From Vitrella brassicaformis CCMP3155 (Eukaryota; Protista; Chromerida), in assembly GCA_001179505.1 (NCBI GenBank), contig CDMY01000503.1, positions 1-63,463 of the forward strand: a stretch of DNA of 63,463 nucleotides, given 5' to 3'. A program made the position numbers and the translations under genes. Below, in pieces: positions 4,687 through 8,792 of the stretch (positions are counted from its first letter, which is position 1; each line of letters starts with the position of its first letter). The notes under the pieces were generated by a model. It had not been told where the DNA came from and made no database searches. It was given only the letters and a program-made list of their open reading frames with translations.

Positions 4687-6314
4687 TCACCCCCTGCTGT
4701 CTGTTTCGTTCCCCCTCGTCGAGAGCGATTTCAAGCCCCTGAAGTGCGGCTTGAGCGGCACACCGGATGCCGCAGGCGCCAACAGGCCACTGCTGTGCTC
4801 ACTCGTGCTGGACACCCGGCCGTCATGTGACGAGTGGGCAGACATGCCCCCGTCCTGCCTGACAGCAGCCGAACCCGCATCGAGAAACCGCCGCTGCAGA
4901 CCACTGCCCTCATTGCTGTCGTGGTTCGCCGTGGGCGGCGGCTGGTCAACCACCGAGGTTGACAGGTAGTTGCCCATGCGCCAGTAGAGCCGCTCGTGAA
5001 TTGCCCTCCCTTGCGAGATCCTCTTGTGCCGGTGCACTGGGCTGGGCACACTGGCGGCCGGATGGGGACGTGACGGCGAGGGTGCAGAGGGGAGGGCACC
5101 GATGGGTGGCATCGACGGCGGCAGGGGCGGCCGACTGTGCCGGTGCGGGGCCTCGCGATGATCCGCCCTCCTCCCAGTGCTCACCACAGGGGACAGATCG
5201 CCCACAATCCTCGGGAGAGCTATAGAGGCCACGTCGGCACGCTGAGGAGAAGAACGGTCCGCCGAGTGCCGCCGACGCCGGGCATCACTCATGAGTGGGA
5301 AGGTATGGTTGAGAATCGGGCTGGCATCGGGTGCATCCGTCCACCGCGGTGCGGGGCTGGCGGGGGTAGATCTGGCAAGCCGCCACGGTGCCAGCTGCGG
5401 TGAGGACAGCAGTGAGGGAGAGGGGGACTGGTCGCCAGCAGCAACCAAGGCTTCGAACAGCTGCAGACACACACAGAGGCATCACACGATACTGGCTTGG
5501 TGACCGTGTCATGTTTGTACCTGTTTTGCTTCGCGGAACGGAATCCCTTGTGAGCTGCTGGCAGGTGAGGGCGCCTCCCCACAGTCGGTGCCGGTGCGGC
5601 AGCTCTCGGCGCCCTCCGATTTCCGCCGCTCTCTGGGCCTGGGTGGGTCCATCTGCCGCTGCTGCGGTGGTGACCCGCTGGCGCGCCCCCTCTCCCACAA
5701 CATGCGCTGAAGCAGAGGGATGAAGCTCTCGGACGAGCGGTCTTCGCCACGGATCTTCTCGTAGAGGCGGGAGAACACCTTGTCCCTGTCAGAGGCCTTC
5801 TTGGACGAGTAGAGGCGCATGTAGTGCTCTATCATCTCTATGTGGTGCTGCTCCCGCTGGGTGCGAAAGAACAGCTGCTCCTGACTCACAGACACGCAGC
5901 CACCAACCAACACGCACACATCGGCGCTTGGGCATACACACAGCGAGGAGAGTGCTGTCTGGCGCACCAGGCTCTCAGTAGAGTTGGGATGCTGCAGCTT
6001 CTCGCGAGCCTTCGCGTGTTCTTCCCTCTCATGACGCGCTGCAGCACACAGTGGCAGATCCATCACGCCTTAGTGCCTCATGAATGCAATGAGTGCTCGT
6101 CTGTGTAACTAGGTGGCAAGTTGGCACCTTGATTCTGTTGCTGCTGGCGGAAGCCTTCGGGGTTGAGGGCGCTGGACGAGGTGTGCTCATCCTTCCGCTC
6201 GAACAGGGCCCTCAGCTTGCGGACGTCAGCTTTCTGCTCCTCCTCGCCATTGTCCTCGTCTTCCTCCGCATCGACACCCACATTGGCCTCATCACCACCG
6301 CCGTCAGCCATCAT
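4687..6314 (-). CDS. Hypothetical protein, about 4 exons; acidic/coiled-coil N-terminus and Pro/Ser-rich C-terminus
   Basis: Blocks 6314-~6110 (MMADGGGDEANVG...), ~6035-5980, ~5880-5520 (EQLFFRTQREQHHIEM...VFSRLYEK) and ~5460-4687, flanked by GT/AG and microsatellite introns. No family recognised. Confidence 0.6.
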
Positions 6315-6507
6315 CCATATCTCTATTCAGCCCTTTTTGCTGATCGCCAACATTTGCGAGCTATGTAGGGCGGCAGATCTTGGCGTGTCAAGGAGAGCGA
6401 AGAAGAGGCTGCAGACGTGTGTAGCAGCAAGTAGGAAGCACGATGGCAGCACAAAGGCTGACAGCTTGATTTTCGTTGCTGTGCTTGCTGCGGTTGTTGT
6501 TGGCAGG

Positions 6508-8792
6508 ATGGCAGGGGCAGTCGTGGAGCTGGGCGAATACATCGTCAGGGGTCAGTCAGAACGCGCAGAGCACAGCAACACAAGAAGGATGGACACGTGA
6601 GCCTTTCTTCCCTCTCTCTCTTCTCATTCTGTGTTGCATCTGCCCACCCACCCACCCATCCTCCTTCACTCACTCACTGTCCACACAGAGTCTCACAATC
6701 CCGAGAATCTGCATGCGGTCGAGTTGGCCGACGAGATGAACAACATCCTGACGGCCATGAAGCTGGCGTGCAAGGTCATCAACCGGGAGATATCCAAGGC
6801 CAACACATACGGGGTGGACACCACCAGGTCGGGGCTCGCAGAGGACATGCCCTCACTCGCCAACAGGCGCTTCCTCGACGCCATGGTCAACAGAGAGGTC
6901 AGTGAGTGAGTGGGTGAGTAGAGAGGGGGGCGTCCTGTGACCACGAATCGACTTGTGTGCCTTGCGCGTCTGTCTTAGGTGGTTGCGGGCATTGCCACAG
7001 CGTTCCTTGACGACTTTGTGGCCATCCCCAACTGCAAAAACAAGGGGTGAGGGGCAACCCAGGACACACAGCAGGCATGCACAGTGAACAAACAAGAAAG
7101 ACACTTCTGATGCTTTCTTTGTCTCGATCAACAGGTTGGTGCTGCTGATCCATCCGCTGGACGGCAGTCGGCAGATCGATCTCAACGTGTCGGTCGGGAC
7201 GCTATTCTCCATCTACAAGAGGTTAACACTGCGCAGCACAGCACAATGACACTTACGAGGGCCAAGGGGCCACGTATCGGGGTGTGTTGATTGATTGCTT
7301 CAGAGTGACCAAGAAGGGCGACCCCGTTGAGTTGCGTGACTTCCTACAGCCGGGGTGCAACCAGGTGTGCGCCGGATACGTCATCTATGGCTCATCAACC
7401 ATGATGGTATGTATCCCAAGCACACACACACACACACACACATGCTTAAAAGCAGCCCTTCCCCACTCTCTGTTTGGCCGCTGATATGTGCAGGTGTTCA
7501 CGATGGGCAAGGGCGTCACCGGATTCACTCTCGTGAGCAACTCATGCCATATGCCGACACTGACACCCCCCCTCACCCACACCTACTCATTGAGTCTCTT
7601 CATGGGCATGGGTGGGATGCGTGTGTGCATGTAGGACCCGAGTCTGGGGACGTTGTATCTGTCCCATCCGCGCGTCAAGATCCCCCAGGACGGCAAAATC
7701 TACTCGGTCAACGGCGGCAAACGCAGGAGATTCCCAAAGGGCGTCACCGAATACATCGGTAGGAGGGCAGGGCAACAAACACACGGACGGGAGAGCAGCG
7801 GATGGATGGACCCTATGTGTGTGAGCGTCTGTGTGTGATCAGATTACTGCCAGGATCGTGCATTCTCTCTGCGCTACATCGGGTCGCCCATCGCAGGTCA
7901 CCCACACAGGAGGGACCACAGGGGGGGAGCGAACGGTGGCTTCATGTGCCTGTGCACGTGTGCGTGTGTGTGGATCAGATTTCCACCGGAACTTGCTCAA
8001 GGGCGGCATCTACGTAAGATCGATGGACACATCGACATGGCCTTTCTGTACTGCCCGCCAGAATATTCAGCTATCTCCCTTTCTGTGATCCTTCCTGTGT
8101 GTTTAGATCTATCCCCCCGTGAGCCATCCACACACAACATCTGTGGCTGTCGCACCACACAACGCAAAAACCACACAGCCAACAATACCCTCTGTTCGTC
8201 GGCCATTCGTATTGTTTGTGTGCAGACGTTTGTGGACCCGAAGCCGTCTGTGTCGATGGTGTTTCAGTGCAACCCCCTCTCATTCCTTGTCGAACAGGCC
8301 GGAGGCAAAGCCAGCGACGGGTGGGGTGGGTGGGGGGGCAAACACGACACGGACGAATGGATGGATGCATTGTGGTGACCCTTGTATGTCATATCGATGT
8401 GTGTGTGTGTGTGTGTGTGTGGTGTCAGGTTCACGCGCATCCTGGACATCGAGCCGACGGCACTGCACGACCGCATCCCATTCATCTGCGGTGGGTCAAC
8501 GACTTGGGGCGTGTCGAGCCATTGCATGCATCCATTTGTGTGTGAGCGTCTGTGTCTGTGTGTGTGTGTGTGCGTCAGGGAGCCCACTGATGGTCGAGAA
8601 GGCCGAGGGTTTCATGGCCAGAAGTGAGCGAGACACACACAGATGCACACAGACACCCACAATCGATGGATGTAACGGATTCTGCTGTCGCGCCCCCCTG
8701 CACCTGTGTGTGTGTGTGTCTGTGTCGCAGAGAAGATGGCCGACGGTGGCTGGTGCTTCTCGAGGCAGCCGGCGGTCAACGGTAAGAAATGA
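6508..8792 (+). CDS. fbp: Fructose-1,6-bisphosphatase class I homologue (E. coli/Bacteroidetes-like lineage), probably catalytically inactive; about 14 exons
   Basis: Spliced product contains [23 protein letters not shown], [46 protein letters not shown] and [23 protein letters not shown], collinear with E. coli Fbp. No N-terminal targeting extension seen. Confidence 0.92.

What the first reader, a model, noticed from the sequence alone, without database searches (positions are those of the whole stretch)
6508..8792. Pseudo-FBPase: metal/catalytic residues lost, 6-phosphate pocket kept - possible sugar-phosphate sensor
Seen versus canonical class I FBPase (pig numbering, aligned by eye): KLD74V is replaced by DMPS; SEE (E97/E98) by TAF (6997-7005); D118PLDGS by HPLDGS (CAT at 7151); and K274LR276LLYE280 by SVSMVFQ (8247-8267). 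D121/G122, N212 (YSVN), R243/Y244 (RYIGS) and Y264 (IYP) are retained. The frame, all exons and the overall fold motifs are intact. Known: E97, D118, D121 and E280 coordinate the catalytic metals, while N212, R243, Y244 and Y264 bind the 6-phosphate. Inference: an enzymatically dead but conserved protein that may bind F6P, FBP or F2,6P2, or regulate an active FBPase in heterotetramers.
Basis: partly seen in the sequence, partly recalled or inferred. Interest (0 to 1): 0.75.

Follow-up and report, generated by a model that had tools for sequence, protein, structure and literature searches.

The report
Vitrella FBPase-I paralogue without catalytic centre
This is an expressed, correctly spliced Vitrella gene for a fructose-1,6-bisphosphatase look-alike that has lost almost all metal-binding catalytic residues; it is the orthologue of the already studied, poorly active "FBPase I" of Toxoplasma, so it is a new member of a known gene family, though that family's dead-looking active site has had little attention.

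Summary
Window 6508-8792 (+) holds a 14-exon, 345-aa gene, all introns GT-AG. Spliced contigs from four sequencing runs in three studies support it, including a 12-nt micro-exon.

The protein is 50% identical to E. coli class I FBPase and folds like it. Yet six of seven metal/base residues are replaced (D68, D74, E97, E98, D118, E280; only D121 stays), as are K274, R276 and the AMP-site residue Y113. The fructose-6-phosphate pocket is intact (N212, R243, Y244, Y264).

This is not a Vitrella oddity. The same changes define a monophyletic clade in chromerids and apicomplexans, including Toxoplasma TGME49_205380 ("FBPase I").
- Former metal-ligand positions vary freely within the clade.
- New residues are fixed (S274, S276, Q280, Q125, K215, G213, and a C-terminal K-x-x-DGGWCF tail).
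- dN/dS among three coccidian orthologues is 0.03-0.06.

Most likely it is a conserved, cytosolic, non-catalytic or nearly non-catalytic sugar-phosphate-binding paralogue. The essential, active Toxoplasma enzyme is the other paralogue, 247510 (CRISPR score -4.77).

The sensor and heterotetramer ideas remain untested. A secondary source reports some in-vitro activity for TgFBP1, which is the main caveat. The scan had no earlier finding on this gene.

The parts
6431..6506 (+). Intron in the 5' UTR (76 nt, GT..AG); the exon carrying the ATG starts at 6507
   Evidence: Joint 6430->6507 in spliced contigs of runs X1 and X2. An in-frame TAG at 6366-6368 with no ATG after it means 6508 is the start and there is no targeting extension.
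6508..6550 (+). Coding exon 1 (residues 1-14 plus one base); the N-terminus aligns to residue 1-9 of E. coli Fbp
6689..6897 (+). Coding exon 2: helices of the former AMP domain, the shortened catalytic loop, and D-M-P-S (6844-6855) in place of K72-L-D74-V
6979..7046 (+). Coding exon 3; T-A-F at 6997-7005 replaces S96-E97-E98
7135..7221 (+). Coding exon 4: H113 (7151-7153) for D118, D116 (7160-7162) = retained D121, R119-Q120 (7169-7174) for S124-N125
7304..7406 (+). Coding exon 5
7494..7532 (+). Coding exon 6
7635..7758 (+). Coding exon 7: N209-G210-G211-K212 (7710-7721) = N212 kept, E213->G, position 215 ->K
7843..7896 (+). Coding exon 8: R235-Y236-I-G-S (R243, Y244, G246, S247 kept)
7979..8013 (+). 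Coding exon 9 ([11 protein letters not shown], identical to E. coli)
8107..8118 (+). 12-nt micro-exon (I-Y-P-P; Y256 = Y264 kept); missing from the public gene model
   Evidence: The letters ATCTATCCCCCC lie between the two sides of joint 8013->8226 in all four runs. P0128 compared with P0244.
8226..8320 (+). Coding exon 11: S-V-S-M-V-F-Q at 8247-8267 replaces K274-L-R276-L-L-Y-E280
8429..8490 (+). Coding exon 12
8579..8623 (+). Coding exon 13
8731..8792 (+). Coding exon 14 with stop; clade-specific C-terminal motif K-M-A-D-G-G-W-C-F at 8733-8759

Best explanation
The gene encodes the Vitrella brassicaformis orthologue of apicomplexan "FBPase I" (Toxoplasma TGME49_205380, most likely TgFBP1; Chromera cytosolic FBP X2D8V6). 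This is a cytosolic paralogue of a bacterial-type (Flavobacteriia-like) class I fructose-1,6-bisphosphatase.

Shown here:
- The FBPase fold and the fructose-6-phosphate pocket are kept (N212, R243, Y244, Y264, G246, S247, D121).
- The three-metal catalytic centre is dismantled (D68, D74, E97, E98, D118, E280).
- The two basic residues on the active-site strand are gone (K274, R276).
- The catalytic loop is shortened and unconstrained, and the AMP site is lost (K112, Y113).
- The losses are shared by the whole clade. The clade is under strong purifying selection and has fixed a new set of residues around the old 1-phosphate site: S274, S276, Q280, Q125, mostly R/K at 124, K at 215, and G at 213.

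Inferred:
- The protein still binds a fructose phosphate or bisphosphate, but without metals, and hydrolyses it not at all or very slowly.
- The positive charge lost at 274 and 276 has been moved to positions 124 and 215.
- It therefore acts as a ligand-binding, non-catalytic partner or sensor in the cytosolic F6P/FBP node rather than as a gluconeogenic enzyme.
- Its output may run through oligomer contacts or through the clade-specific C-terminal K-x-x-DGGWCF tail.
For: Gene model and expression: 14 exons, all GT-AG. Spliced contigs from four runs in three studies match with no differing letters. The model is identical to P0244.

Family and fold: Pfam FBPase plus FBPase_C over the full length. 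50% identity to E. coli Fbp. AF2 model with pLDDT 87.5. Best structural match is E. coli FBPase 2GQ1, TM 0.82/0.91.

Residue losses: site table over 18 clade members and 9 canonical enzymes. Enrichment test p=0.0045 and p=0.0005.

Clade: monophyletic at 100/100 with a stem of 0.85 changes per site, placed next to Flavobacteriia enzymes; the internal order roughly follows the species tree. There is a score gap of >=499 bits for clade members against <=459 bits for bacteria.

Relaxed versus newly fixed positions:
- E97, E98, D118, D74 and the loop vary freely.
- G268P, K269S, L270V, R271S, L272M, Y274F, E275Q, N117Q and N209K (E. coli numbering) are fixed.

Selection: dN/dS is 0.03-0.06 among Toxoplasma, Neospora and Besnoitia.

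Toxoplasma link:
- TGGT1_205380 is 388 aa and carries the peptide TAELGTPNAGNK, which matches P0293/P0294.
- The other paralogue, TGME49_247510 (FBPase II), has CRISPR score -4.77.
- Olson 2020 states that FBPase II keeps five of six metal ligands.
- The essential TgFBP2 cannot be replaced by over-expressed TgFBP1, which has minimal in-vivo activity (review PMC7729029).

The score against the NCBIfam equivalog NF006778 is 364, below its cut-off of 368; a canonical relative scores 537.
Against: - No activity, metal-binding or ligand-binding measurement exists for the Vitrella protein.
- The review of Blume 2015 says TgFBP1 and TgFBP2 differ in Vmax, Km and AMP sensitivity. That implies recombinant TgFBP1 showed some FBPase activity and AMP inhibition, although this clade lacks both the metal ligands and Y113/K112. 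I could not read the primary paper, so neither its gene identifiers nor its expression host are confirmed.
- One database name for the 205380 protein is "fructose 1,6-bisphosphatase II" (P0294), which conflicts with the ToxoDB numbering.
- Every clade member keeps D121, Q280 and at least one acidic residue at positions 99-101, so a reduced or altered metal site is not excluded.
- I could not retrieve the FBPase II paralogue of Vitrella, so the existence of a partner enzyme in this genome rests on the literature for Chromera and Toxoplasma.
Confidence: 0.6

Rival explanations
1. It is still a working phosphatase (FBPase, SBPase or another sugar phosphatase) with a remodelled active site. It would use fewer metals or different ligands, for example His/Asn at 118, Gln280, D121 and an acidic residue at 99-101. 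It would be insensitive to AMP.
For: - The review of Blume 2015 reports kinetic constants for both Toxoplasma isoforms.
- D121, Q280, Q125 and K215 are invariant, and R/K at 124 is nearly so, as expected for a functional pocket.
- Each member has an acidic residue somewhere in 99-101.
- Very strong purifying selection.
Against: - The positions that would have to bind metal are not fixed within the clade: 97 is A/Q/E/M/S/K/I/T, 98 is F/S/P/M/H/A/C/V/L, 118 is H/N/T/A, and 74 is P/A/H/C/R/T/V. The acidic residue at 99-101 changes register from species to species.
- Chromera has Ala at 118.
- The catalytic loop is shortened and variable.
- The Toxoplasma orthologue shows minimal in-vivo activity and cannot rescue loss of FBPase II.
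- From general knowledge of pig FBPase mutagenesis (not tested here), single changes at E97, E98, D118, D74, E280 or R276 each cut kcat by orders of magnitude.
Confidence: 0.25
2. It is a decaying pseudogene or an annotation or splicing artefact, and the real mRNA encodes canonical residues.
For: The public gene model (P0128, 327 aa) is wrong around the active-site strand.
Against: - Spliced contigs from four runs match the genome exactly at all the sites in question.
- The frame is open across all 14 exons.
- Orthologues with the same changes occur in at least 13 protein clusters from chromerids to coccidia.
- dN/dS is 0.03-0.06.
Confidence: 0.01
3. It has no ligand-sensing role and serves only as a structural subunit, for example stabilising or localising the active FBPase II or another partner. 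The conserved pocket would be a by-product of fold constraints.
For: - Both Toxoplasma isoforms are cytosolic.
- Toxoplasma FBPase I was enriched in PPKL proximity labelling and is phosphorylated at T379 near the C-terminal tail.
- The clade has its own C-terminal motif.
Against: The residues that contact the sugar and 6-phosphate are invariant, and the newly fixed residues cluster on the active-site strand and the 1-phosphate loop rather than being spread over the surface. That pattern points to selection on the pocket itself.
Confidence: 0.12

Closest known systems
Toxoplasma gondii FBPase I (TGME49_205380 / TGGT1_205380; most likely TgFBP1 of Blume et al. 2015), with its Neospora, Hammondia, Besnoitia, Eimeria and Cyclospora orthologues
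   Same: - Same monophyletic clade, about 61% identity.
- Same replacements at D74, E97, E98, D118, K274, R276, E280, E213, N125 and Y113.
- Same C-terminal K-x-x-DGGWCF tail.
- No N-terminal targeting signal; the Toxoplasma protein is cytosolic.
   Different: - Vitrella has 14 exons against 5 in the coccidian genes.
- Its N-terminus is shorter: the coccidian proteins carry about 35 extra residues.
- It has His at 118, as Toxoplasma does, but A-F-L at 97-99 where Toxoplasma has M-M-E.
- The host is a free-living phototroph, so any stage-specific (bradyzoite) role does not transfer.
Chromera velia cytosolic FBP (X2D8V6 / AHK23667, Petersen et al. 2014)
   Same: Closest relative: 68% identity and sister in the tree, with the same signature. 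Petersen 2014 already described bacterial-derived cytosolic FBPs in Chromera and apicomplexans and an early duplication giving two apicomplexan subtrees.
   Different: Chromera has Ala at position 118 and a longer C-terminal tail. In the passages I could read, the 2014 paper treats it as a cytosolic FBPase isoenzyme and does not comment on the lost catalytic residues.
Escherichia coli type I FBPase (Fbp; PDB 2GQ1, 2OWZ, 2Q8M, 2QVR) and Flavobacteriia class I FBPases
   Same: 50-55% identity, the same two Pfam domains and the same fold (TM 0.82/0.91). The 6-phosphate and sugar-contact residues are identical.
   Different: The bacterial enzymes keep every metal ligand, K269/R271 (E. coli numbering), the full catalytic loop and the AMP-site Tyr. 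They lack the C-terminal tail.
Toxoplasma FBPase II (TGME49_247510, TgFBP2)
   Same: Paralogue from the same bacterial-type acquisition according to Petersen 2014; cytosolic.
   Different: FBPase II keeps five of six metal ligands (Olson 2020) and is essential (CRISPR score -4.77). It supplies the catalytic FBPase activity that FBPase I cannot replace. I could not retrieve its sequence or its Vitrella orthologue.

Membership tests
Class I fructose-1,6-bisphosphatase (enzyme, EC 3.1.3.11) | FBPase N-terminal plus C-terminal domains over the full length | tested here: met
   PF00316 E=2.4e-43 and PF18913 E=5.6e-43 on P0244. The exons map colinearly to the two domains.
Class I fructose-1,6-bisphosphatase (enzyme, EC 3.1.3.11) | FBPase fold | tested here: met
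   AF2 model with pLDDT 87.5 and pTM 0.88. Foldseek top hits are E. coli FBPase 2GQ1, 2Q8M and 2OWZ at TM 0.82-0.91.
Class I fructose-1,6-bisphosphatase (enzyme, EC 3.1.3.11) | Metal ligands and general base: D68, D74, E97, E98, D118, D121, E280 (pig numbering) | tested here: not met
   Only D121 is kept. The others are gap/G, P, A, F, H and Q.
Class I fructose-1,6-bisphosphatase (enzyme, EC 3.1.3.11) | 1-phosphate and 6-phosphate basic residues R276 and K274 | tested here: not met
   Both are Ser, and this holds across the whole clade.
Class I fructose-1,6-bisphosphatase (enzyme, EC 3.1.3.11) | Sugar and 6-phosphate pocket: N212, R243, Y244, G246, S247, Y264 | tested here: met
   All are identical in Vitrella and in every full-length clade member.
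Class I fructose-1,6-bisphosphatase (enzyme, EC 3.1.3.11) | Curated equivalog score (NCBIfam NF006778, cut-off 368 bits) | tested here: not met
   364 bits for Vitrella and 361-366 for Chromera and Hammondia, against 537 for a canonical relative.
Class I fructose-1,6-bisphosphatase (enzyme, EC 3.1.3.11) | Metal-dependent hydrolysis of fructose 1,6-bisphosphate | not testable with these tools
   This needs a biochemical assay. Only second-hand data on the Toxoplasma orthologue were available.
Apicomplexan/chromerid FBPase I clade (TGME49_205380 orthologues) | Groups with Toxoplasma 205380 to the exclusion of canonical enzymes | tested here: met
   Clade of 14 rows supported at 100/100. There is a profile score gap. 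The FBPase II clade could not be included in the tree.
Apicomplexan/chromerid FBPase I clade (TGME49_205380 orthologues) | Signature residues: S274, S/N276, Q280, Q125, G213, K215, no Asp at 118, and the C-terminal K-x-x-DGGW motif | tested here: met
   All are present in Vitrella.
Pseudoenzyme (conserved non-catalytic homologue of an enzyme) | Catalytic residues lost while the gene stays under purifying selection and is expressed | tested here: met
   Loss. dN/dS of 0.03-0.06 in coccidian orthologues. Conservation from chromerids to coccidia. Spliced transcripts. dN/dS for Vitrella itself was not computed, because the only close relative (Chromera, 68% identity) is too distant for a usable dS.
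Pseudoenzyme (conserved non-catalytic homologue of an enzyme) | Demonstrated lack of catalytic activity | not testable with these tools
   The literature on the orthologue is mixed: minimal in-vivo activity and no rescue, but kinetic constants are reported.

The most novel reading that the evidence does not exclude
FBPase I is an ancient, metal-free fructose-phosphate receptor that arose before chromerids and apicomplexans split. It would bind F6P, FBP or a related bisphosphate in the remodelled pocket and tune the cytosolic F6P/FBP cycle. It could do so by mixing into tetramers with the active FBPase II, or by engaging other partners through its conserved C-terminal tail. That would make it the first described FBPase-derived pseudoenzyme sensor.
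Probability: 0.3. Interest if true: 0.7.

Novelty: new member of a known kind. Interest (0 to 1): 0.45.

Why it matters
Toxoplasma needs a constitutively active FBPase (FBPase II) even when glucose is plentiful, and it keeps a second isoform whose role is unexplained. This analysis shows that the second isoform belongs to a clade that lost the catalytic metal centre before chromerids and apicomplexans diverged, yet has been held under very tight selection ever since, with a newly fixed pocket.

That turns "why two FBPases?" into a testable question: what does the pocket bind, and whom does the protein contact? A free-living, culturable alga (Vitrella or Chromera) offers a system in which to ask it.

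The analysis also corrects the public Vitrella gene model. That model deletes exactly the active-site strand that carries the diagnostic residues.

Tried and rejected
1. Getting the spliced protein into the search tools. MAFFT alignments of single-exon translations with E. coli Fbp (A1, A2) misplaced the short pieces. The search with A2 returned only Enterobacterales FBPases, so one of the three word searches was wasted.

2. What worked instead. An exhaustive phmmer search with exon 2 alone found Chromera and two other orthologues. Searches with P0121 and with the clade profile and the cluster look-ups then gave the exact 345-aa protein, P0244.

3. First structure prediction. With only the 12-row clade alignment it gave a poor model (pLDDT 55). 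It was redone with 70 rows.

4. FBPase II paralogue. I could not retrieve it for Vitrella, Chromera or Toxoplasma. The tree therefore lacks that clade, and the long stem of 0.85 changes per site may be shared with it.

5. Blume et al. 2015 is not held, and several literature searches for gene identifiers were fruitless. The assignment of the essential isoform to 247510 rests on the CRISPR score in the hyperLOPIT supplement. The row for 205380 was cut from the stored file.

6. Sidik 2016 and Hines 2007 are not held. Conservation of the E. coli anion (PEP/citrate) activator site was therefore not tested. My recollection that K30 and R80 belong to that site is a lead only; both are invariant in the clade.

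7. Pocket geometry was not analysed, because no tool returns model coordinates.

8. A tandem duplicate in the window was looked for and not found.
Full report
**Gene model and expression.**
The region 6508-8792 on the + strand holds 14 coding exons, all with GT-AG introns of 81-138 nt. Together they give a 1038-nt reading frame of 345 codons.

Logan contigs from four sequencing runs in three studies hold only the exon share of the sampled words. Laid on the window, they show every predicted junction, an extra intron in the 5' UTR (6431-6506), and the 12 letters of a micro-exon (8107-8118) between 8013 and 8226. No letters differ from the genome.

An in-frame TAG at 6366-6368, with no ATG after it, fixes the start at 6508. 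The N-terminus aligns with residue 1 of E. coli Fbp, so there is no targeting extension.

The translated model is identical to UniRef A0A7S1K6P6 (P0244, 345 aa, from a Vitrella transcriptome). The genome annotation CEM18557.1 / A0A0G4FUK6 (P0128, 327 aa, whose longest contig is this 63463-base window) skips the micro-exon and the first 42 nt of exon 11. It therefore lacks 18 residues, including the diagnostic strand.

**The observation.**
The protein carries both Pfam FBPase domains over its full length. It is 50% identical to E. coli Fbp over 320 columns, and E. coli FBPase is its best match among solved structures by sequence. An AlphaFold model built with a 70-row alignment has mean pLDDT 87.5 and matches E. 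coli FBPase 2GQ1 at TM 0.82/0.91.

Pig/human numbering was transferred through the printed E. coli-human alignment. The replacements are as follows.

| Canonical residue(s) | Vitrella |
|---|---|
| K72-L-D74-V | D-M-P-S |
| S96-E97-E98 | T-A-F |
| D118 | H |
| K274-L-R276-L-L-Y-E280 | S-V-S-M-V-F-Q |

D121, G122, N212, R243, Y244, G246, S247 and Y264 are kept.

- The catalytic loop is 6 residues shorter than in E. coli, and the D68 equivalent is gone.
- S124 is R, N125 is Q, E213 is G, and position 215 is K.
- The AMP-site pair K112-Y113 is G-L.

Of 160 columns invariant in nine canonical relatives, Vitrella keeps 109. It keeps only 1 of 7 metal/base positions (p=0.0045), or 1 of 9 when K274 and R276 are added (p=0.0005).

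**Not a Vitrella oddity.**
An exhaustive search with exon 2 alone found Chromera velia X2D8V6 and two other eukaryotic proteins. Searches with the Chromera protein and with a clade profile found 13 clusters that score 499-654 bits. The best bacterial enzymes, all Flavobacteriia-type, score no more than 459 bits.

The clade members are:
- Vitrella and Chromera;
- Toxoplasma, Hammondia, Neospora and Besnoitia;
- two Eimeria species and Cyclospora;
- Cardiosporidium (two copies);
- Rhytidocystis and Digyalum;
- two unnamed transcriptome assemblies and two Logan contigs.

A maximum-likelihood tree puts the 14 full-length members in one group (100/100) on a stem of 0.85 changes per site, next to Flavobacteriia FBPases. 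Vitrella and Chromera are sisters, and the coccidia are in species order. This agrees with Petersen et al. 2014, who reported bacterial-derived cytosolic FBPs in Chromera and apicomplexans and an early duplication into two apicomplexan subtrees.

**Pattern of constraint.**
Across the clade the former metal and base positions are changed and also unconstrained.

| Position (pig numbering) | Residues seen in the clade |
|---|---|
| 97 | A/Q/E/M/S/K/I/T |
| 98 | F/S/P/M/H/A/C/V/L |
| 118 | H/N/T/A |
| 74 | P/A/H/C/R/T/V |

The catalytic loop varies in both length and sequence. In contrast, a new set of residues is fixed:
- P-S-V-S-M-x-F-Q on the active-site strand (K274S, R276S/N and E280Q in all members);
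- N125Q;
- E213G (Ala or Ser in two members);
- Lys at position 215;
- mostly Arg or Lys at 124;
- a C-terminal K-x-x-D-G-G-W-C-F tail that bacteria lack.

The sugar and 6-phosphate contacts are invariant. Codon alignments of the Toxoplasma, Neospora and Besnoitia genes give dN/dS of 0.03-0.06. The clade is therefore under strong purifying selection on a pocket that no longer looks like a three-metal phosphatase site.

I read the gain of basic residues at 124 and 215, alongside the loss at 274 and 276 and the loss of four carboxylates, as a switch to metal-free binding of a phosphorylated sugar. That is inference.

**Link to experimental work.**
TGGT1_205380 ("fructose-bisphospatase I", 388 aa, chromosome VIIa, peptide TAELGTPNAGNK at 374-385) is the Toxoplasma clade member P0293/P0294.

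The other paralogue is TGME49_247510 ("II", 381 aa, cytosol). It has a CRISPR fitness score of -4.77, and Olson et al. 2020 say it keeps five of six metal ligands. The essential, catalytically required TgFBP2 of Blume et al. 2015 is therefore almost certainly 247510, which makes TgFBP1 the orthologue of the Vitrella gene.

A review summarises the Blume results:
- Both isoforms are cytosolic.
- TgFBP1 has only minimal demonstrable activity in vivo.
- Over-expressed TgFBP1 cannot rescue loss of TgFBP2.

This fits a non-catalytic or crippled protein. It also implies some in-vitro activity and AMP inhibition, which are hard to reconcile with the lost ligands and the lost Y113/K112. I could not read the primary paper. 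One database name for P0294, "fructose 1,6-bisphosphatase II", conflicts with the ToxoDB numbering and remains unexplained.

**Verdict.**
The reading as a conserved protein with a lost catalytic centre and a preserved 6-phosphate pocket is well supported. "Dead" is likely but not shown. The sensor and heterotetramer roles are untested.

The gene is the Vitrella member of a paralogue family already in the literature, so it is not a new kind of thing. As far as I could read, that literature does not spell out three points established here: the loss of the metal centre across the whole clade, the relaxed-versus-fixed pattern of constraint, and the error in the public gene model.

**Limits.**
- No FBPase II sequence could be retrieved, so the duplication could not be placed in the tree.
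- No coordinates were available for pocket geometry.
- dN/dS was measured only in coccidia.

Noticed in passing
window 8014-8267: The public Vitrella gene model (CEM18557.1 / A0A0G4FUK6, P0128, 327 aa) joins 8013 directly to 8268. It skips the 12-nt micro-exon 8107-8118 and the first 42 nt of exon 11, and so loses 18 residues (I-Y-P-P ... S-V-S-M-V-F-Q). Transcript contigs and UniRef A0A7S1K6P6 (P0244) support the 345-aa form.
   Followed up: yes
window 6431-6506: A 76-nt GT-AG intron lies in the 5' UTR, one base upstream of the ATG. It is seen in the spliced contigs of two runs.
   Followed up: partly
P0294 (Toxoplasma TGGT1_205380 protein): The same protein that ToxoDB calls fructose-bisphospatase I also carries the nr name "fructose 1,6-bisphosphatase II [Toxoplasma gondii]". 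This naming conflict could mislead anyone mapping TgFBP1 and TgFBP2 to gene identifiers.
   Followed up: partly
Toxoplasma orthologue (literature supplements, PMC10746186): TGGT1_205380 was enriched in proximity labelling with the phosphatase PPKL (0 against 19 spectral counts). It is phosphorylated at T379, just after the clade-specific C-terminal motif.
   Followed up: no
cluster of P0133 (P0245, P0246): Clade members are filed under bobwhite quail (Colinus virginianus OXB72416.1, flagged UNVERIFIED_CONTAM) and sperm whale (Physeter catodon XP_028344001.1). These are most likely apicomplexan contamination in those assemblies.
   Followed up: no
window 7411-7450, 7941-7976, 8389-8429 and other introns: Several introns of the gene carry (CA)n or (GT)n dinucleotide runs, and the read tool skipped these as repeats.
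   Followed up: no
window 6078-6314 (- strand): A divergently oriented 78-aa ORF rich in Asp and Glu starts about 200 nt upstream of the FBPase-like gene's leader. It may share a bidirectional promoter region with it.
   Followed up: no
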